Source: Tubulanus polymorphus
Taxonomy: Eukaryota > Animalia > Nemertea
Assembly: GCF_964204645.1 (NCBI RefSeq)
Contig: NC_134032.1
Location: forward strand, 7,614,275-7,678,274
Direction of reading: 5' to 3'
DNA length: 64,000 nucleotides
Below are positions 26,457 to 37,859 of this stretch, piece by piece. The position numbers and the translations under genes were made by a program. The first letter of the stretch is position 1; every line of letters starts with the position of its first letter. The notes beneath the pieces were generated by a model. That model saw nothing but the letters and a program-made list of their open reading frames with translations, was not told the origin of the DNA and searched no databases.

Positions 26457-29431
26457 ATGTATGTACCGTTACCTGAAAAGAAAACGGAAAATTATTGTAA
26501 ATGTATACCGCACGCATGTATATATCTTATATTTCACTTTTATTCGTTAAAATCACACAGATCGGTGAAATAAGGCAGAGTATTTCTTGTTTGCTCTTAA
26601 TATAATTGAGAGAAAAAAATTATGAGATTTTATTTACTCACCTTTTTACTTCACACGAACAGTTGTCGGTTTCAAGATTCACGATATATATACAATTGTC
26701 TTCTCTGCATAAAAAATATTAATTACTGTAAAATATTAAATTGAAAATTTGGAATTCTAATACAAGTAGATTATGAGATTTTGTCTGGTTAGCTAATGAT
26801 AGCTTATTGGTTAATGTTGTGCAGTGATAAATGGAATAACAAATAAATTAATATATTTGGAACAAAAATACTGACAATCATTTTCATGTGCACAATCTTA
26901 AGTATCATGTTGGTTCTGCCAGAATGGGTTAGCTGCGTGAATTGACTTGGAAACTTAACCAAACAGCACAGACTACAGCCTCGAATCAACATTAAATGTT
27001 TCCCATGGACCCGAGTCGACCCAGTTTCCCAAATGAATATTAGACCCAAATCGAACAAATCAACTAGCCACCAGAAACAAACATGGAAGTGGTTCAAAAC
27101 TACTTACTTTATTCTAAAATATTCCTGGGTTCAATCGCCATATTAGTTTAGGGTTCATTTCATTTTCGGTAGCCAAGGCTAAGTTTTGAGTACGTTGTGA
27201 GAAACTTTTTGATTTTCAATCACTGAAATCAAAAGATGAAAGAAACTAAGCCCCCAATACTTAACCTCACTGCCATATATACGGCAATCAGTGGGTCTTT
27301 AGGCCTACTATTAGCTTAGTCTTCATCAAATAAAAAGGAAGGACAAAAAGGCCTACCAGGTACACTGGACCAGGAGACCTAATCAGCCTGTAATTTGCCT
27401 TACAAAAGATCCTATAAATACTTACACGCTTATTTGGCAGCACACATTTCCTAAATAGACTTAATTACTCTCTGCTGTTAAGGGAGAACTCTTTTAAGCT
27501 TTTTTCTTCGTTGAAAAATCGCATTCATCATCGATTCAATAAACCCGGAAGTAAAAGTAAACGTCAATATCAAGTAACTAACAAACTGCATCTTCTCAAG
27601 AATTGTCTTAAGCTCAAATATGAACCGATTGAGGTATAAATATGTTGCGATAGTCCGTGTTTAAACTGATACAGACATCTAAAATACGCGTGAAACGGCA
27701 ATAATCCGCGGTCGTGTCGCTAGCGAAAAGGCGGCCATTGTTATTTCTCGGAACCTATGTATCGGCTTGCTGTCACCGATTCAATTCAATTAAATATTGA
27801 TACATGGCTGAAGCCCGCGGCCGAATCACTGGTGGTAATGAATTTATTTATTTCGATACCTCGTCAACACTACAGCTTTTCTCCGCTGCATCTTTTCGAT
27901 GTGTTTAGTTTAGGCCTACGACTCGCCGGTACTTTAATGGTACTTAAATGATATATCGTACAATATCCGGTTAATTTTGTAAAGGAAAATAGAATATTGT
28001 TAAACTAACTGTTTGAAGGCCAAAACACTGGGTGTAATACATTTATGTGTACTTGATTTGATTCCCATGGCGAGGAGAACTTGCAGCGGATCCGTGGAAC
28101 GACGATGTAAAAACACACGTTGATTCATCGATCTTTACAGCTCGAAAGTGCGTATAATATTCTGAGCAGCAAATATCCTGTGGATCGGTTAAGTGTACTG
28201 ATGAAGAAAATGCTCAATTGTTAAAATTACTGTTTGAAGACCGCGGCTGAATGTGAAGTCATGCGGCAATAAATTTGTTTATTTATACTTGAATTGATAA
28301 TCGAAGTGACGAGCACCTGTGGTGGATTTCGGCATGACGACTCAGGAAAGGTTGAGCCCCATTCGATGAGGCTCAACCTTCGATGTTTACAGTGATTTGT
28401 AACGTCGATTCATCAAAATTCCCATGGAGTATTTGTAGATCGAAGTGAGCACAAGGCAATCAAACGGATTGTATCGGAAACAGTGGTAAGGTAAAAAGCC
28501 CATGTACTGTCGACGAAAATAGTGTGGAAAATGGAAAAAAAGAATAAATCACGTGAATTTCAATAGGGTTTTCTATGGAGAAACAGAAAATGCTAATAAC
28601 TTATCAAGCAGTTTTGTTTTATGTCATAACATTTCATTGATGTGGGCCTACACTGTAAACTAAACAAGACTTATGATCTCCAGTCAAAAGAAAATCTAGA
28701 TTTCCTTCAAAAAGCTACGTTTATTGATTTATGTATATCATTTAATGTAACGTCGCGAAACAGTAAGCGTAAAAGTAAGTGGTAAACTTTTCCAATTCAG
28801 AGTGCTCTATTCTATCCATGGGTACACCGGTATCAATTCCGTAAACCTACTTCAACCGAAAGTCAAATGAGACCCGGGACTAGTAAGATGAATAATCTAA
28901 ACTAAAAGGTATGTGATGTATTGGATCGGTTTATCTCGTGAATTTTAGACGAGAGAAATTTGATACGTAACTTACAACAAAGTCAAAGCCCGACTCAACG
29001 TGCAGCGATACTGCGCCACGCGTAGCGTGTATTAATTTAATTAGGTCAATTTCTGGCATTATACATGAAGAGGCGGGGCTAACTGCCAATCATTGAGTGC
29101 GTCTTGGAAACAATAACAACTTTGACAGGCGTTCCCCAAACCTATATTCGATCATGCCAAACTGAATTTCATAATAATACAGAATGATATGAATTCAATA
29201 CCTGCACCCCATACGTGGTCAAGGTGTGATCTAGTGCGCTACCATAGAGCTTAGACTTGTATCTATATGACTTACCACCAACGGGAAACTATCATGCAGT
29301 ACATTTCTTTGTTTTAATTTAGATTTTTATCGGAGTGTATATTAACGTTTCTTGTGGATGTAATATTGTGTAATAATGCTAAATATAATTCTCTTGTAAA
29401 TTGATCAGCCTGATATTGTGCAATCTCCGGC

Positions 29432-31373
29432 ATGTTGAAATCGCTAGAACTAGATGAAAAACCTGTTTCAAGTGATCAACTCCGTACACAATACATTTAT
29501 CTGGCTAGGAAATACCACCCGGATAAAAATCCAAATGAGGACTCGACAACAAAGTTCCAACAGGTAAACAAAGCCTATATTAACTTACGAGATATCCTGA
29601 AAAATGAATCGGAAGGCAAAATTCGCAGGTCGTCGTCGTCTTCATCTACCCCGGTAACAATCAATGAGAAAACCATGTCGGTTGTAGTTGAGTTAAAAAC
29701 TGATCATGTCCTGCCACTGTTGCGATTATTCAGAGAAAGTTATGGTGACCCGATCGATCGTGGGAACCATGGATTACACTTCAAAACGACGTATGATGAC
29801 AGCTTCTATATTATACACATAATCGTATACAAAGGCTCGAAAAACAAAACCCCTAAAGTGCATGTTCAGGGAAATTCTTTTCTGCTTTGGGTCAGTGAGC
29901 AGCTGCCGGGTATACTCAATAAACTTGCGCAGAAAATCGACAAACCTTTATCACCAACTGAAGCAAAGAAGAAACCGAAGAGCAGTTGTATAATTTGCAC
30001 AAAGTCAGATGACGACGACATGCTGCAATGTTCCCTTTGTGACTCCTGGACTCATAACTGCTGCTCTGCGCTGAATTGCGATTATGTACAGAAGCTCTCA
30101 GCTAACCTAGATGAAGTGTAGACCTACCATCTGTGATCCTGAACTACCTTCCTCTCCGGAAGGAAATGATCCTGCGGTGCCTACATCCACTACCTCTACA
30201 GGTACACAATGTGATGGCGGTGCCGTTGTTTTGGATGCAAGCCTGCTGTTGGAAGTGTTCCAATCGCTACAGTCCTCAGTCGTCCAGTTATGCCAACAAG
30301 TAGAAAAATGTGCGAAAAAATGTGACCTCAAATTCATTTCGGATAAAGTGAATAACTCGATAGAGCGAATTGACAACTTAGCGCAGAATTGTAAACTTTT
30401 TCCTGAGCTTATAAACTACGAAAAAAGTATAAAGACAAACAGTGACCGCAACGAATCACACGTTAAAGAAATCCTGAAATGTACCAAAGCGTTCACCAAA
30501 TCAAGTGACCTTCAATCGGAACTGTGCTCGGTTAAGGAAGCCCTGGAAGAGAGAGATGCTACTATTGTGGAACTGATCGAAAATATCGAAATGTATCGCG
30601 TAGCCAACTCAGAAAAAGTTGATAAATCATCATCTCCGCAGCGTGTTAATAAGACAAAACAAAAGCGTTGCCCCCGTGTGGCTCCGGACGATAACATGGT
30701 TAGGGTCACGGTACCCTATGATACTAACAATAACGAAACACCCGCCAAGTATAATGATGCGCATGAGACTCGCGGCGAATCCATTAACTCTGTATTCAAC
30801 GATCAGGACTCCGCATGTTCTGACAACCACAAGCGAGATCGTCAGCGAAACAATAGGCGTAAACATATAATTATTGTAGGTGATTCAAACCTTAGGTATG
30901 TGGATGAAAGTCGTTTCATCAGAGACCAATGTTTCGTAGAAAAGTATGCGGCGTACACCATGGCAGAAGCGCGTGATGTGATAAGGGAATTGTGTGATGA
31001 ACCCGATTGTATCGTTTTGCATGTCGGTACCAATGATATAAAGAACACAGGTTGCGCTGACAAATGCGTTTTGGAAAGGACCGATCTTGCGAATTTTTTA
31101 AAAAGCAAATTCCCATGTTCAAAGCTTGTTGTGGCTCTAGTTCCGCCCCGATTCGATCACCACCATCTGGATGTCAAGTCCCGACTATTCAACGCTGCAG
31201 TTGAATCAATAGCTGCTGATGACAAATCAACTCTAACATGTCGTGATGATAATCTTAACAACAGAAGACTCTTTGCGGACCGTATCCATCTAAGTCGAAA
31301 TGATGGTGTAAGACTCTTTGCCAGGAACCTGGTAGTCGCAGCTCGAAAATCGTTGGACCTTTTTACACCGTAA
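29432..31373 (+). pseudogene. LINE ORF1: J-domain - QG-motif domain - PHD finger - coiled coil - SGNH/GDSL esterase (stop/frameshift at ~30120)
   Basis: LARKYHPDKNPNEDSTTKFQQVNKAY; IHIIVY...KVHVQG...LLW; CIIC...MLQCSLCDSWTHNCC...TIC; IIIVGDSNL, VLHVGTNDI, DRIHL. Confidence 0.88.
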
Positions 31374-31871
31374 CGTGTCGCGAAATAACATGACCGAATC
31401 ATCGAACATGCTTCAGATATGTAAATGGAATGTGCATGGTCTGATTAATCAGCTTGGAAACAAGCTGATGGACAGCTTCTTCCAAAGACAAATAAAACCG
31501 TATGATATAATCTGTCTTACGGAAACACACACAGATCATGATGCTGTTCTACAGCTCCCTGGTTATTTTATTTATCACTCAGTAAGGGAACGTTCCAAAA
31601 ACGCCAGACGTAACTCAGGAGGAATTGTTATCCTATGTAAAAGCTATCTGAAACATCATGTAAAAGTAGTTGAGCGGTCATCATCTGACATCATTTGGAT
31701 CAAGTTTGATAAAAACCCAAAAAATCTCAAACCACTTTTCATAGCAGCTTGTTACTTAAGCCCCTCGAACTCTACATATGGAACAAAAAATTCAGATGAT
31801 ACCATTCAACTACTAAATCGAGTTGCCTGATATACAGCTCTTTGGGCAATGTGTTACTATTAGGCGATTTT

Positions 31872-31983
31872 TTTTATCTTAAAATAGGGATTGTCCCCAT
31901 TATTTATTTATTTGGCTGGTAAATTTTGTTTGATTTTTCGATTGAGTGTCCCTTACAGACCCACCACACCTGCCGGGAGCAAA
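31872..31983 (-). mobile_element. 112-bp retroposed insert inside the endonuclease region
   Basis: Flanked by 16-bp near-perfect TSD ACTATTAGG(C/T)GATTTT (31856-31871, 31984-31999); minus strand ends AATAAA...A-run. Confidence 0.65.
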
Positions 31984-32502
31984 ACTATTAGGTGATTTTA
32001 ACTGCAGAATAGATGAATCTAATGAAATTAATAGATTTGATGCTTCAGACAAACTTTATTTGCCTAACCTAGCCAGTTTAGAAATATCTCCCCCCCCCCC
32101 CCCACAGTAGGCATATCTAACAGGAAGAGCAAAGATAAAGTAATTAATAAAATGGGGAGGAAACTAATTGATTTGTGCAAAACTTTTAACTCCAACTTCC
32201 TGAATGGCAGGGCACCGGGTGACTTCCTCGGGGAATTCACTTGCCATCAATGGAATGGGGGTAGTGTTGTTGACTTGGCTATAGTAAATGAGGATATCTT
32301 CCCGCTAGTTGAGTATTTTCACGTGCACAGGTGCCTATCAGAACTCTCTGATCACTGTCCGATCGGTATAGGTATTAGCTATGAAAATCTGTATAATCCT
32401 TTTTAACTTCTTGACAATAGTGCCACCAATGAATTTGAATACGTAAATTTTCGAAACAACCATCTTAAGAAATATAAAACACCACCCCAGGTGAAAGACT
32501 TC

Positions 32503-33439
32503 ATAGCTAGTCCTGAGATAGATGCTAAATTAGATAACTTTCTAAGTAACTCCATCTGGAACTCAGCCAATCCAACTGCCAGTGATGTATATAGGATCAA
32601 TGATGAATTTATAAATATTATAAACAACGGCTCTAATATATATACCCGACTTAAATGTTTCACCGATAAATGCAACAAGCTGTGGTACGATAGTGAATGT
32701 ATGAAGTCACGTAGAATTGTTCAAGGCCTTAGCAAGCAGCTGCAAAAATCGCCATCTCAGGCCAATAGACAAAACTACTTTTATGCTAAGAAATACTACA
32801 AAAAACTTGTTAAAGGCAAACGTGCCCAATTTAGACAGTCAAAATTTGATAAAACCGCGAACTGAAAGCAAGACCAAGAGAATATTAGAAGCTTGTAAAC
32901 GAATTAGCAAAAAACGGAAAAATATCCGTATCTGATAATGCTCTTCCAAACCCTGATAAATTTGTTAGTCATAATAGCTAGTCCTGATATAGATGCTAAA
33001 TTAGATAACTTTCTAAGTAACTCCATCTGGAACTCAGCCAATCCAACTGCCAGTGATGTATATAGGATCAATGATGAATTTATAAATATTATAAACAACG
33101 GCTCTAATATATATACCCGACTTAAATGTTTCACCGATAAATGCAACAAGCTGTGGTACGATAGTGAATGTATGAAGTCACGTAGAATTGTTCAAGGCCT
33201 TAGCAAGCAGCTGCAAAAATCGCCATCTCAGGCCAATAGACGAAACTACTTTTATGCTAAGAAATACTACAAAAAAACTTGTTAAAGGCAAACGTGCCCA
33301 ATTTAGACAGTCAAAATTTGATAAAACCGCGAACTGAAAGCAAGACCAAGAGAATATTAGAAGCTTGTAAACGAATTAGCAAAAAACGGAAGAATATCCG
33401 TATCTGATAATGCTCTTCCAAACCCTGATAAATTTGTTA
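32503..33439 (+). repeat. 471-bp tandem duplication inside ORF2
   Basis: Units start ATAGCTAGTCCTGA at 32503 and 32974; same peptide IASP.IDAKLDNFL...KKYYKK appears twice. Confidence 0.92.
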
Positions 33440-36400
33440 ACCATTTCAAAACGATTTTCGAGGCCAAACAAAAGTCAGATGTACAGTCGGAATTATGTGA
33501 CCCTGTCCCAGATAATAACGCTATTTTTCACGAGTTAGACTATTTAATCTCAGATTCCGAAGTCAGAAAAGCCATTTTGGAACTAAAAAACAACAAATCC
33601 CCTGGGATAGACTGCATCACTAATGAACTATTGAAATATGGTCTGGAAAATATCATACAGCCACTAACCAAACTCTTCAATCTAGTATATTCGTCGGGAC
33701 ATTTTCCCAAACAGTGGTCTGAAGGTATAATCGTACCATTACACAAGAAAGGTGACAAGAGTGACCCTGATAATTATCGGGGCATCACATTAAGCATCTG
33801 ATTAGGCAAATTATTCTCCACCATTATTAATAAAAGGCTACTGCCCTTCTTGAAGTCCAACAAAGTTATTGCACCAAACCAAATAGGATTCATGCCCAAA
33901 TGCCGGACGACCGATCATCTCTTCACCCTCAATAGACTTATAGAAAAAAAGTTCTCTCGCAAAGAAAAGCTATACTGTTGCTTCATCGACTTGAAGAAAG
34001 CGGTTGATTCGGTCTGGCATGAGGGGCTGGTACACAAAATTAAAAAATTCGCATTCGGAAAAAACTTCACAAAAATAATTGAGAAGATGTATGAAAATCT
34101 ATCATGGCGTCTGAAAGTCAATCGAGGTCAGGTCTCCCCACAATTCAGCTCAACTATAGGTGTTCAGCAAGGCAATGTTTTGAGCCCATTATTATTTAAT
34201 CTGTACATAAATGACTTAATGTCCGTCTTTGATGAAAGCTGCTGTCCGGTTTCAATTGGAGATATTTTAATTAATTGCTAAGCATATGCAGATGATTAAG
34301 TTATTGTATCAAATATTAAGGAAGGTTTACAGAATTGTCTTGACAAAATTAATGATTATTGTTCAACATGGAAACTTGACATGAACACTGCGAAAAGTAA
34401 AGTCGCAATATTTAATAGAAAAGGGCAGATTCCAATTAACACCGAATTCTTCATAAATGGGCAAAATCTTGAAATTGTTAGCGAACACAAATACTTAGGC
34501 TTGACTTTTTCCGCTAATGGTTCCTTTCATAGGGCAAAGGAAGAACTTAGAAAATCCGCCAATCGAGCTATGTTAAGTATAATACGCATGATAGGACACC
34601 AAAATTGCTATATGGTTGCGAGGTGTGGATGCCCAACAATAACCTGGCCAATAAATTGCTGAAAAACAAGGCTTTCTCTTTGGAAGAAACTTTTGAAAAG
34701 GACATCCACCTCACACAACTTTTAACCAAATTTTGTAAATTCGTGCTGAATGTGAATAGAAGAACCACCAACATAGCTGTGACAGGAGAATTGGGGAAAT
34801 ATCCCTTGTATATTAACTGTTGTACCAGAATTATTACTTATTGGAAACATATATGTACAGATAGCGACGGAATTGTAAATAGAACACTGAAAGATATCCG
34901 GGATGAGGATAAGTTTCATTGTGATTGGAAAGTGTTTTTGAATGCGTTGTTATAGACTAGCAGAAGCGATGTAGATGTATATAGTAATTTTGTACCGACT
35001 AATCTTCCCAACTGTATTAAACATATCCTACAAGAAAGATACAAAATATTTTGGCATGATAAAATCCAAAAATTCAATAAACTTCAATGCTGGAGTAATA
35101 TTAAATCCGAATTTTGCATGGAACTGTACCTACTACTTAATATCCCAAAAACATTTAAATCTGCAATATCCCGACTCAGATTAAGCGCACACTCCCTACT
35201 AATTGAAAAAGGGAGACACCTCAATCTAGCAAGAGAGAATACGTTATGTGAAAAATGTAATATTGTTGAGGATGAATTCCACTTTGTTATGCAATGTTCA
35301 AAGTGGTCTGACAATAGAAAAAGTCTTCTTGAAGAATTATATAGAAATTTTCCGGAATGCAGGAGGTTCTCAAGTGAGTGTAAATTCAGAACCATTATGT
35401 CAACTCTACAGATGGCGTATAGCCTTGGGAAATTTATAAAGGCTTCTTGCTAGATTCAGCTATGTGTATGTATATGACATGATATGACGTTGTTTACTGA
35501 ATCAGATTTTTTACTTTTACATAGCCTACTCATATGAACCGTCTCGGACTATTGAATTCTAGTCATAGTATAGAGAAACTAGTGTATCTGCCTATCTTAT
35601 CATGTTTGTATATAGACTGCTATAAATTATATCTAGTTTTGATATATACTAAACATGTATTCTTGTTTGTTTTCCTCTTTATTGTAAAAAGCCAATAATG
35701 TCATTTGAATATAATGGTGCAATAAAGATTAAATTGAATTGAATTGTGAAAAGGGGCATCAACATCGATGAGTTGTTTGTATTAATTGGAATAGGTAATT
35801 AGTTGTGCTCAAAAGTAATATCAGTGTCACACACATGTCGGTGTCAAAACATGTCAGCTGTACTCATACAGTAGTACTCTCTCCATTATATATAATCTAA
35901 AATATTGTTAAGCACACAGTTTGATAGTTGGAGTTGTAAGATAGAAGTTGAAAATAAATCATCTAAATTCAAGATCATGGCGTTATTTCAATGATGAGAA
36001 AAGGACAAGATATTCACGTCATGACAAAACGACGCTGTTTCAATAGTTTCGGTTTCGGGAACCCCATGAAAGCTAGGGTTGGTTTCATTCATTTCCAATA
36101 GGAGCCAGGTTTGTTCCGTCATTTCCTGGGCAGGCGGTCCACCTCTAGTCTAGTCTTAAGACACTCTTAAATCGATTTTGTTAATTTGTTTTGGGATTTA
36201 GTGAAACTCGTTTTATAAATGGAGTCGTATTAACGGGTCTAAATCGATTTAAGAGTTGAAATCGATTTTAGATTTGAACTTTTTTGTGAAACCGGGCCCT
36301 GGTTTCACCCACCGAAAACACCGATTTTCGTATACAGACTGAAAGCGCCCAACTGTACATTCGTAAGCTTGAACTGGATAGTTCGGTTTTAGTAGCGCAT

Positions 36401-36759: not shown

Positions 36760-37859
36760 AACTAGAGGGGTCCAGAGACGCTATGCCCTCTTGGGAAATG
36801 CTTTGAAATGCTCAACAATCTTACAATTTCAAATCTGTTGATGATGTTATGGTACTACGATCTCCACCACTTGTAATGGGACTGCTATCTCCACCACTGT
36901 TATGTCACGGATTTCTCCGCCAATGTTGTGTCCTCTGACTCTCCTCTAATGTTGTTCTTACTACTGTTGTACCGTTGGACCTTCCTTTTTTCTCAAGCAG
37001 ATATAAAGTGCTAACAAGACTTCCTTGTATGATGATCACCTTCTGTTCTTATATATTATTCTTCATCCTATTGTTACATATTAGTAGCCTTGTTACATTT
37101 ATAAACCAAATATCAAAAGAAACCCATTGAAGCGGGGGACTTGGTATCCGCCTCTGTCCGTCTGTCCATCCGCATCAGCTTGTGAACGCGATTAAAGAAG
37201 AACCGTTGATCGCAGGACTTTGATATTACAGAGTATGATTACCCCTAGGGAGAGGATGTGCCCTATTGATTTTGGGGTCCAAGGATCAAAGGTCAAGGTC
37301 ACTACAGGTCATTCATGTGAAAGCTTGTGATCACGATTCAAGAAGAACCGTTAATAGCAAGACCAAAATATTACGTATGGTGATTATCCCTAGGCAGAGG
37401 ATGAGCCCTATTGATTTTGGGGTCCAAAAATCAAAGTTCACGGTCACTCAGGTTATTCATGTGAAACCTTGTGAACGCGATTCAAGAAGAACCGTTGATC
37501 GCAGGACTATGATATTATGTATTATGATTATCCCATGGGAGAGGATGTGCCATTTTGATTAAACGTATCTCCAATTAAATGGTGATATTGATATACATGT
37601 ATATATATTGATTAAATGGTGTCCGAGGATTTAAGGTCAAGGTCACTACAGGTCATTCATGTGAAACCTTGTGAACGCGATTTAAGAAGAACCGTATACC
37701 ACAGCACCATGATATTACGTATTATGATTATTACCCCTAGGGAGAGGATGCGCCCTATTGATTTTGGTGTTCAAGGTCCAAAGGTCAAGGTTACTACAGG
37801 TCATTCATGTTTAATCTTGTAAACACGATTCAAGAAGAACCACTGATAACAGGACAATG
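36760..37859 (+). repeat. Helentron/HINE-like non-autonomous element with ~145-bp internal satellite (units at 37179, 37324, 37468, 37668, 37816)
   Basis: GCGGGGGAC + (CTGTCC)n microsatellite + tandem units containing TTTTGGGGTC...AAGGTCAAGGTCAC; probable far end ~39760-39804 (GCGGGGGAC, GATAC-GTA-GTATC hairpin, CCTTGTT). Confidence 0.7.

What the first reader, a model, noticed from the sequence alone, without database searches (positions are those of the whole stretch)
29432..31373. LINE ORF1 that begins with a J-domain (Hsp70 co-chaperone module)
Seen: the first ~55 codons (MLKSLEL...DQLRTQYIYLARKYHPDKNPNEDSTTKFQQVNKAYINLRD) form a complete J-domain signature with intact HPD and KF..VN.AY. 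They run intron-free and in frame into a QG-motif domain and PHD finger, then (after one lesion) a coiled coil and SGNH esterase, directly ahead of APE-RT ORF2. An in-frame TGA at 29411 makes ATG 29432 the start. Established: CR1/L2-group ORF1s are modular (PHD, RRM, esterase); HPD activates Hsp70 ATPase; polyomavirus T antigens carry an N-terminal J-domain; hepadnaviral RT needs Hsp40/Hsp70 for activation. I know of no described LINE family with a J-domain. Inference: a retrotransposon lineage encoding its own Hsp70 recruiter for RNP assembly or disassembly, ORF2p folding, or remodelling of host restriction complexes.
Basis: partly seen in the sequence, partly recalled or inferred. Interest (0 to 1): 0.92.

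Follow-up and report, generated by a model that had tools for sequence, protein, structure and literature searches.

The report
LINE retrotransposon encoding its own J-domain
The window holds a decayed copy of a jumping gene (a LINE) whose first protein starts with a genuine J-domain, the module that switches on Hsp70 chaperones; many copies in this genome, amphioxus and marine samples carry it, and I found no paper describing it.

Summary
Observation confirmed; interpretation largely supported. Window 29432-30121 encodes a J-domain: Pfam DnaJ E 3.8e-11, above the curated cut-off, HPD intact, AlphaFold pLDDT about 95. It is followed by a conserved unnamed alpha/beta domain and a PHD finger. 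After one frameshift come long helices and an SGNH esterase, then a broken APE+RT ORF2 and an (ATTGA)n tail. The element spans 29418-35746.

The J-domain is not a captured host exon. About 16 loci in this genome, in several subfamilies 46-64% identical, carry the same J-first ORF1. All five fetched with long flanks have APE+RT downstream. Outside this genome, 36 of 88 long relatives start with DnaJ. Both ORFs are open in a Branchiostoma lanceolatum locus and a TARA Oceans scaffold. HPD is kept in 52 of 53 J-bearing relatives. LINE J-domains separate from ten host J-domains on a tree.

Sister elements carry an RNase H1 hybrid-binding domain or a whole RNase H in the same N-terminal slot.

The domain layout matches Repbase RTEX ORF1s listed, without any J-domain, in Schneider et al. 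2013. The clade is therefore more likely RTEX than CR1/L2, but this is untested. Hsp70 recruitment is inferred: the docking test gave only weak support. No RNA evidence was obtained. Another first-stage note (s1-496750) flags the same kind of ORF1 elsewhere in this genome.

The parts
29418..35746 (+). Whole decayed LINE copy: ORF1, ORF2, 3' UTR and tail
   Evidence: Similarity to sister copies on C7 (93% and 87-88% nt) starts at 29418-29420. The 3' end CAATAAAGAT + (ATTGA)n is shared with other subfamilies.
29432..29617 (+). J-domain (aa 1-62 of ORF1); HPD at aa 29-31
   Evidence: Pfam DnaJ E 3.8e-11. AF2 pLDDT about 95 with helices 14-28 and 38-62. VIA Z 8.2, rmsd 1.3 A over 59 residues to the Rbj J-domain. 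H29, P30, D31, F42 and A48 are invariant or nearly so in 56 sequences.
29654..29941 (+).
   Evidence: G114 and Q146 are invariant; G147 and W153 are nearly so. pLDDT is above 90. No Pfam hit. Only middling fold matches, Z 6-7.8, to KA1, CYTH, Med18/20 and the RNase H3 N-domain.
29978..30140 (+). PHD finger, interrupted near its end by the frameshift
   Evidence: Pfam PHD is weak here and at E 4e-6 to 8e-6 in intact copies. VIA Z 6.6 to the Pygo PHD. The alignment shows the last Cys pair (ICDP) in the second frame.
30111..30125 (+). Frame change that splits ORF1 into 29432-30121 and 30111-31373
   Evidence: The two ORFs overlap. Intact copies read through this point in one frame.
30237..30611 (+). 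Long helical (coiled-coil-like) region of ORF1
   Evidence: AF2 helices at aa 43-129 and 132-167 of the second piece, pLDDT 80-95. Weak Pfam coiled-coil hits in relatives.
30861..31373 (+). SGNH/GDSL esterase domain and ORF1 stop
   Evidence: GDSL_2 E 5.8e-7. In the intact sister copy L026, the PDB hit is 4c1b, the ZfL2-1 ORF1p esterase, E 6.3e-5. AF2 pLDDT about 97; Foldseek E 4e-7 to GDSL and PAF-AH folds. S259 and H393 are invariant; N308 and D390 are nearly invariant.
31375..32406 (+). ORF2 apurinic-type endonuclease, in three frame pieces
   Evidence: Exo_endo_phos E 7.9e-7 and Exo_endo_phos_2 E 7e-4. ORF list.
32496..33444 (+). Tandem duplication of about 471 bp inside ORF2 (98% identical copies)
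   Evidence: the repeat finder families D1 and D2, spacing 471-472.
33577..35453 (+). ORF2 reverse transcriptase and C-terminal Cys/His motif, in several frame pieces
   Evidence: RVT_1 E 2.5e-18 at 33850-34278. 67-70% nt identity to the L029 ORF2. C-x2-C...H-x4-C motif in ORF 35118-35453.
35454..35746 (+). 3' UTR with CAATAAAGAT (35720-35729) and (ATTGA)3.8 tail (35728-35746)
   Evidence: The same terminus is seen in L026 and L029, and CAATAAAGAT followed by (ATT)n in the B. lanceolatum locus L063.

Best explanation
The window carries a dead copy of a non-LTR retrotransposon whose ORF1 protein is built as follows: J-domain, then a conserved alpha/beta domain, a PHD finger, long dimerising helices, a basic linker and an SGNH esterase. 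The J-domain is an old, inherited and selected part of this LINE lineage. It is not a recent host capture.

Most likely (inferred) it works as any class C J-domain protein does. Its HPD loop docks on cytosolic Hsp70/Hsc70 in the ATP state and triggers ATP hydrolysis. Hsp70 then clamps onto whatever sits next to the J-domain, here ORF1p itself, ORF2p or the LINE RNP. The element would thereby bring its own chaperone adaptor for assembling or taking apart its RNP, possibly at membranes, since this ORF1p class binds acidic lipids.

Shown: the domain, its fold, its linkage to ORF2, its spread and its conservation. Inferred: Hsp70 binding and the step of the life cycle it serves.
For: Domain identity:
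- Pfam DnaJ is above its cut-off in the window copy and in four further ORF1 copies of this genome tested.
- AF2 and VIA-align give a J fold at Z 8.2, rmsd 1.3 A.
- The consensus of 56 sequences reads like a canonical J-domain, YE.LGL..AS..IK.AYR.LAK.YHPDKN...F..LN.AY..L.

Linkage to ORF2:
- The protein search gave 25 matches at about 16 places in this genome.
- Five loci fetched with long flanks all have ORF1(J) directly followed by APE+RVT_1.
- A common 3' terminus occurs in three subfamilies.
- Outside this genome: L064 (TARA) and L063 (B. lanceolatum) have both ORFs open. L065/L066 and L067 have an open ORF1 and an APE+RVT_1 ORF2 that runs to the contig end.

Spread:
- The profile search found 6252 hits, 22 of them at E<=1e-30.
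- DnaJ is present in 36 of 88 long representatives, each standing for a cluster at 50% identity.

Selection:
- HPD is kept in 52 of 53 and in 54 of 56.
- Between subfamilies pN is 0.36 in the J-domain against 0.67 in the adjacent linker, with synonymous sites saturated.
- Within subfamilies dN/dS is 0.20-0.29 over 659-670 ORF1 codons.

Origin:
- 60 LINE J-domains and 10 host J-domains fall on two sides of one branch (SH-aLRT 88).
- The six J-domains from this genome form one clade (99).

Docking:
- Window J aa 1-70 against this genome's own Hsp70 (L068) with ATP scored 0.43 (runs 0.42, 0.48, 0.43). The best of 3 controls scored 0.01. Contacts agreed in at least 78% and partner pLDDT was at least 73. 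The tool's verdict was weak support.
Against: There is no biochemical or expression evidence. The RNA-like runs hold none of the element, and no listed holder is RNA.

The docking score lies in the band the tool calls 'more often wrong than right unless likely beforehand', and J-domain/Hsp70 complexes are solved, so the pass may come from memory.

The window copy and every copy examined in this genome have a broken ORF2, so current activity here is not shown.

One relative (P0023) has HLD instead of HPD.

ZfL2-1 ORF1p, the closest studied protein, is dispensable in a HeLa assay (PMC3905857), so ORF1 modules may be accessory.
Confidence: 0.8

Rival explanations
1. The J-domain is kept for a role that does not involve stimulating Hsp70, as in J-like scaffolding domains such as Tim16/Pam16. 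It might serve as a protein-protein or membrane adaptor.
For: VIA-align also matches the Tim14-Tim16 complex at Z 7.9. Docking support is only weak. No functional data exist.
Against: J-like domains that do not activate Hsp70 have typically lost HPD (established knowledge). Here HPD is kept in 52 of 53 and 54 of 56 sequences, together with the helix II basic residue and the helix III Phe.
Confidence: 0.12
2. The J-first ORF1s are, at least in part, domesticated host genes derived from a LINE ORF1. The window copy would then be a pseudogene next to an unrelated LINE ORF2.
For: In Branchiostoma they are annotated as ordinary genes under unrelated names. Copy number per subfamily here is low, at 2-4.
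Against: ORF1 is directly followed by APE+RT in all five further loci of this genome fetched with long flanks. Its J-domain clade is 99-supported. The same holds in four other sources. Copies end in a shared LINE 3' terminus. Copies are dispersed and decayed like transposons.
Confidence: 0.04
3. A chance or local event: a host DnaJ exon or retrocopy fused to this one LINE copy.
Against: There are about 16 loci in this genome and dozens of clusters elsewhere. LINE J-domains are separate from the ten host J-domains tested.
Confidence: 0.01

Closest known systems
Esterase-type (Type IV) LINE ORF1p, e.g. zebrafish ZfL2-1 ORF1p (PDB 4c1a/4c1b), and the Repbase RTEX ORF1s of Branchiostoma, Saccoglossus and Nematostella
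   Same: Both have a coiled-coil region followed by a linker and a catalytically complete SGNH esterase at the C-terminus, upstream of an APE+RT ORF2. The best PDB sequence hit is 4c1b (intact sister copy L026). Coiled-coil and esterase positions match the RTEX-n_BF and RTEX-1_SK rows of Table S1 in PMC3905857.
   Different: ZfL2-1 and vertebrate CR1 ORF1ps start with the coiled coil and have no J-domain, middle domain or PHD. The long N-terminal region of RTEX ORF1s is left undescribed in that paper. No J-domain is mentioned there or in PMC4120745.
CR1-like ORF1 with PHD finger (Kapitonov and Jurka 2003; Metcalfe and Casane 2014, PMC4120745)
   Same: A PHD finger sits in a modular ORF1 that exchanges domains between lineages.
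   Different: The catalogued modules are PHD, RRM, CCHC, Tnp22, coiled coil, esterase and zinc finger/leucine zipper. J-domain, RNase H, HBD and NADAR are not among them. That survey found esterase ORF1 only in vertebrate groups.
Polyomavirus large/small T antigen N-terminal J-domain
   Same: A mobile or parasitic genetic element encodes its own N-terminal J-domain with HPD to use host Hsc70. A fold match was seen to 1faf at Z 6.0.
   Different: It belongs to a DNA virus and a different protein context (helicase/origin-binding protein). No homology beyond the J fold was shown.
Auxilin/GAK (DNAJC6/DNAJC26), a class C J-protein that directs Hsc70 to dismantle an assembled coat
   Same: A working analogy only: a single J-domain is tethered to a membrane- or lattice-binding body, so that Hsp70 is loaded onto a self-assembled structure.
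   Different: In auxilin the J-domain is C-terminal. There is no sequence relationship beyond the J fold, and the analogy is from general knowledge, not tested here.

Membership tests
J-domain proteins (Hsp40/DnaJ, Pfam PF00226) | Sequence match to the J-domain profile above the curated threshold | tested here: met
   43.4 bits against 27.8 in the window. 29.6-42.7 bits in four other copies here. 34-66 bits in all ten representative proteins scanned.
J-domain proteins (Hsp40/DnaJ, Pfam PF00226) | HPD tripeptide in the loop between helices II and III | tested here: met
   HPD at aa 29-31. Kept in 52 of 53 and 54 of 56 relatives.
J-domain proteins (Hsp40/DnaJ, Pfam PF00226) | Helical hairpin J fold | tested here: met
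   AF2 pLDDT about 95. VIA Z 8.2, rmsd 1.3 A over 59 residues to 6jmg, and Z 8.2 to 2ys8. Helix I is not predicted in the window copy, which starts within it.
J-domain proteins (Hsp40/DnaJ, Pfam PF00226) | Binds Hsp70 and stimulates its ATPase | tested here: inconclusive
   Only a predicted complex: score 0.43 against a best control of 0.01, verdict weak support. The ATPase assay cannot be done with these tools.
Non-LTR retrotransposon (LINE) | ORF2 with APE endonuclease and reverse transcriptase downstream of ORF1 on the same strand | tested here: met
   Window pieces. L026, L028, L029 and L031. L063-L067.
Non-LTR retrotransposon (LINE) | Dispersed, diverged and decayed copies with a common 3' terminus and no LTRs | tested here: met
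   About 16 loci on 8 chromosomes. Shared CAATAAAGAT + (ATTGA)n end. Target-site duplications were not found for the window copy.
Esterase-type ORF1p (Khazina-Weichenrieder Type IV) | SGNH esterase with Ser, Asn, Asp and His catalytic residues, preceded by a coiled coil | tested here: met
   S259 and H393 are invariant; N308 and D390 are nearly invariant. SGNH fold. Helices at aa 43-167. Hit to 4c1b with the sister copy L026.
RTEX clade (Repbase, RTE group) | Placement of the RT domain with RTEX reference sequences | not testable with these tools
   No Repbase or Dfam references were at hand. The only support is the match of ORF1 layout to RTEX rows in PMC3905857 Table S1. The best ORF2 hits are unnamed.
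   Same limitation. The esterase and PHD occur in CR1/L2 as well, so ORF1 content does not decide.

The most novel reading that the evidence does not exclude
A widespread, ancient metazoan LINE lineage encodes its own Hsp70 co-chaperone. The N-terminal slot of this ORF1 is a swappable 'effector' position that sister lineages fill with an RNase H1 hybrid-binding domain or a full RNase H. If so, the J-domain together with the TBP/KA1-like middle domain acts on the RNP or RNA:DNA intermediate during target-primed reverse transcription. Hsp70 would be used to strip or remodel ORF1p, as auxilin does for coats. This would be the first retroelement-encoded J-protein.
Probability: 0.3. Interest if true: 0.85.

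Novelty: new variant of a known kind. Interest (0 to 1): 0.72.

Why it matters
LINE ORF1 proteins are known to be modular, but the described modules bind RNA, chromatin marks or lipids. None is known to enlist the host protein-folding machinery. A conserved, HPD-bearing J-domain at the front of ORF1, found from a 268-Mb invertebrate-type genome to amphioxus and ocean plankton samples, would show a new way for a retrotransposon to use its host. It gives a simple handle (HPD) for testing what chaperones do in LINE RNP assembly or disassembly. It also adds RNase H, HBD and NADAR to the list of ORF1 modules. Finally, it shows that a long N-terminal region of elements probably already in Repbase (RTEX) has gone unread.

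Tried and rejected
- The search for homologous proteins with the intact 712-aa ORF1 found nothing. This reflects the limits of the word index, because the exhaustive profile search then found thousands of hits.
- The ORF2 search returned only unnamed or 'hypothetical' hits, one of them from Paramuricea clavata, so it gave no clade name.
- The ESM Atlas search gave only weak leads, 0.84 or below.
- Expression: none of the run's holders is RNA. The three small, transcriptome-sized runs hold none of the element. Only the presumed DNA source covers it.
- Complex prediction gave weak support only (0.43 against a best control of 0.01). I do not count this as evidence of binding.
- Middle domain: the best fold matches have Z below 8 (KA1, CYTH, Med18/20, RNase H3 N-domain), so no assignment is made.
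- The esterase alignment in the supplement of PMC3905857 is garbled by OCR and could not be used to compare RTEX sequences.
- Kapitonov and Jurka 2003, and the id I tried for Kapitonov et al. 2009, are not held.
- dS between subfamilies is saturated (pS 0.85), so only pN contrasts are quoted. J-only dN/dS within subfamilies rests on too few changes.
- Rejected readings: host DnaJ exon capture, a chance Pfam hit, and a domesticated gene (see rivals).
Full report
**What is in the window**

ORF 29432-30121 (229 aa) begins MLKSLELDEKP and contains ...ARKYHPDKN...KFQQVNKAYINLRD. Pfam scores it as a DnaJ domain over aa 6-55, at E 3.8e-11 and 43.4 bits against a curated cut-off of 27.8. There is also a weak PHD hit at aa 186-217.

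A frame change near 30111-30125, inside the end of the PHD finger, leads into ORF 30111-31373 (420 aa). Its C-terminal part is a GDSL/SGNH esterase.

ORF2 starts two bases after the ORF1 stop but is in about ten frame pieces:
- apurinic-type endonuclease at 31375-31827 and 32152-32403;
- RVT_1 at 33850-34278, E 2.5e-18;
- a C-x2-C...H-x4-C motif in 35118-35453;
- a 471-bp tandem duplication at 32496-33444.

The copy ends in CAATAAAGAT followed by (ATTGA)3.8 at 35720-35746. Its 5' edge is at 29418. Upstream of that is the end of a different repeat with at least 20 copies at 92-97% identity.

**Structure**

I modelled the 229-aa piece with an alignment of 56 relatives. AlphaFold gives mean pLDDT 87:
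- a helical hairpin at aa 14-62, pLDDT about 95;
- a compact alpha/beta domain at aa 75-170, pLDDT above 90;
- a small zinc-finger-like unit at aa 183-229.

VIA-align matches the first to J-domains (6jmg at Z 8.2, rmsd 1.3 A over 59 residues; 2ys8 at Z 8.2). It matches the last to the Pygo PHD finger (Z 6.6). Foldseek lists many J-domains at probability 1.00.

The middle domain has only middling matches at Z 6-7.8: KA1 domains, half of a CYTH tunnel, Med18/20 and the RNase H3 N-terminal domain. I therefore leave it unnamed.

The 420-aa piece folds into helices at aa 43-129 and 132-167, a disordered basic linker, and an SGNH fold at aa 251-420 with pLDDT about 97. Foldseek matches the SGNH part to GDSL esterases, PAF-AH and the ZfL2-1 ORF1 esterase. 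The catalytic Ser259 and His393 are invariant, and Asn308 and Asp390 nearly invariant, in 35 relatives.

**Family feature or local accident?**

A six-frame search of the window's own genome (268 Mb) with the 229-aa piece gave 25 matches at about 16 places on eight chromosomes. Amino-acid identity was 46-64%. Many matches cover the query from residue 1-13, and several sit in open frames of 542-722 aa.

I fetched five loci with long flanks. In each, the J-first ORF1 is directly followed on the same strand by APE and RVT_1 frames. Pfam finds DnaJ above its cut-off, together with PHD, in all four ORF1s tested, and a GDSL match (one above its cut-off) in three.

These ORF1s start with a conserved MA(A)P about 20 codons before the point where the window's subfamily starts. 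Three subfamilies share the CAATAAAGAT + (ATTGA)n end.

The window's own subfamily has only two other copies, at 93% and 87-88% nt identity. Both begin at the same position.

No copy I examined here has an intact ORF2.

**Beyond this genome**

A profile of the ORF1 alignment was run against 1.84 billion representative proteins. It found 6252 hits at E<=1e-3 and 22 at E<=1e-30. Many hits cover the profile from the J-domain to the end of the esterase.

All ten hits scanned (drawn from the fourteen best) carry DnaJ at E 3e-8 to 3e-18. Nine have the esterase and seven a PHD match; the one without an esterase has DnaJ + PHD + NADAR.

Named sources are Branchiostoma lanceolatum (CAH1250389.1, 'Hypp8850') and B. 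belcheri (KAI8496768.1, misnamed as a receptor). The rest come from ENA, JGI and Logan assemblies, including a TARA Oceans scaffold.

Genomic context confirms the LINE nature of these hits:
- The 7.9-kb TARA scaffold L064 has ORF1 (1137 aa) followed by an intact 1197-aa APE+RVT_1 ORF2.
- L065/L066 and L067 have an open ORF1 followed by an APE+RVT_1 ORF2 that runs to the contig end.
- The B. lanceolatum locus L063 has ORF1 (845 aa) followed by an open 1168-aa frame and the same CAATAAAGAT motif.

**Conservation**

HPD is present in 52 of 53 J-bearing representatives and in 54 of 56 aligned sequences. The helix II Ala and basic residue, the invariant helix III Phe and the Ala-Tyr pair are also kept. 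The family consensus is a textbook J-domain.

Between subfamilies of this genome, synonymous sites are saturated (pS 0.85). Non-synonymous divergence is 0.36 in the J-domain and 0.31 in the middle domain, against 0.67 in the linker between them.

Within subfamilies, dN/dS over whole ORF1s is 0.20-0.29.

On a tree of 58 columns, 60 LINE J-domains and ten single-exon host J-domains from this genome fall on two sides of one branch (SH-aLRT 88). The six from this genome form one clade (99). The alignment is short, so this shows that a single origin is not contradicted. It does not prove one.

**A swappable N-terminal slot**

I took the 88 representatives of at least 480 aa and scanned their first 320 residues. 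The hits were:
- DnaJ in 36;
- PHD in 30;
- the RNase H1 N-terminal hybrid-binding domain (Cauli_VI) in 18;
- a whole RNase H in 6;
- NADAR in 2.

The HBD and RNase H types lack the J and middle domains but share the PHD, helices and esterase. They too are followed by long ORF2s. Those ORF2s are 31-43% identical to the ORF2s of J-type elements, the same range as J-type elements show among themselves apart from the two closely related copies of this genome.

**How it probably works**

The domain has every sequence and fold feature of an Hsp70-activating J-domain. It has no G/F or client-binding region, so it belongs to class C. From established knowledge of J-proteins, such a domain brings ATP-bound Hsp70 to the protein it is attached to and triggers hydrolysis. 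I infer that ORF1p uses this to load Hsp70 onto itself, ORF2p or the RNP.

The closest studied relative is ZfL2-1 ORF1p. It dimerises through its coiled coil, has no structured RNA-binding domain and binds negatively charged membranes (PMC3905857). Chaperone-driven assembly or disassembly of a membrane-associated RNP is therefore a reasonable guess.

A predicted complex of the window's J-domain with this genome's own intronless Hsp70 (L068, ending in EEVD) and ATP scored 0.43. The best of three controls scored 0.01, contacts agreed in at least 78%, and partner pLDDT was at least 73. The tool rates this as weak support, and similar complexes are solved. I do not count it as evidence.

No RNA evidence could be obtained.

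**Comparison with what is known**

The esterase is homologous to that of ZfL2-1 ORF1p (4c1b, E 6.3e-5, query L026).

Table S1 of PMC3905857 lists Repbase RTEX elements of Branchiostoma floridae and Saccoglossus. Their coiled coils start at residues 266-356 and their esterases end at 638-722. This is the layout found here, with an N-terminal region of about 270-350 aa that the paper does not describe.

I could not test this because no reference RT sequences were at hand.

The survey of ORF1 modules in PMC4120745 lists no J-domain. Ten full-text searches found no paper describing a J-domain, or DnaJ, in a LINE or other retroelement protein. Repbase Reports and most subscription journals are not covered, so prior mention cannot be excluded.

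**Verdict**

The J-domain is an integral, conserved module of a widespread LINE lineage. The Hsp70-recruiting mechanism is well motivated but untested. The elements themselves are probably catalogued, while the J-domain appears to be undescribed. I rate this a new variant of a known kind, interest 0.72.

Another first-stage note (s1-496750) reports the same kind of ORF1 on another piece of this genome. It agrees but is not independent evidence.

Noticed in passing
window 29654-29941 (ORF1 aa 75-170): A strongly conserved alpha/beta domain between the J-domain and the PHD. G114 and Q146 are invariant; G147 and W153 are nearly so. It has no Pfam family and only middling fold matches (KA1, CYTH half, Med18/20, RNase H3 N-domain; Z 6-7.8). 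It may be the nucleic-acid- or lipid-binding part of this ORF1p.
   Followed up: partly
P0022, P0033, P0035, P0050; loci L074, L076: Sister LINE ORF1s with the same PHD, helices and esterase body start with a full RNase H or the RNase H1 hybrid-binding domain instead of the J and middle domains. P0013 (L064) ends in a NADAR domain instead of the esterase. I did not find these ORF1 modules listed in the ORF1 surveys I read.
   Followed up: partly
window 29300-29418: The 3' end of an unrelated repeat with at least 20 copies at 92-97% identity abuts the LINE's 5' end exactly. Its full extent and type were not examined.
   Followed up: no
window 32496-33444: A 471-bp tandem duplication (98% identical copies) inside the ORF2 of the window copy.
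   Followed up: yes
L026 (G000:C2:12744000-12753999) and L027 (G000:C2:14022500-14032499): Two copies with intact 712-aa ORF1s are 99.9% identical in inverted orientation. The identity runs at least 1.5 kb past the LINE's 3' tail, so this is an inverted segmental duplication 1.3 Mb apart rather than two insertions.
   Followed up: partly
window 29418-29432; L002, L003: All three copies of the window's subfamily begin at the same base, 14 nt before the ATG, and lack the MA(A)P leader and 5' UTR of the other subfamilies. Either the subfamily has a very short 5' end or the copies share a truncated source.
   Followed up: partly
window 37177-37496: A tandem repeat with a 145-bp unit, 2.2 copies and 84% matches, downstream of the element.
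   Followed up: no
L068:1489-3390 (G000:C5): An intronless cytosolic Hsp70 gene (633 aa, ending EEVD) in the host genome. It was used as the docking partner.
   Followed up: yes
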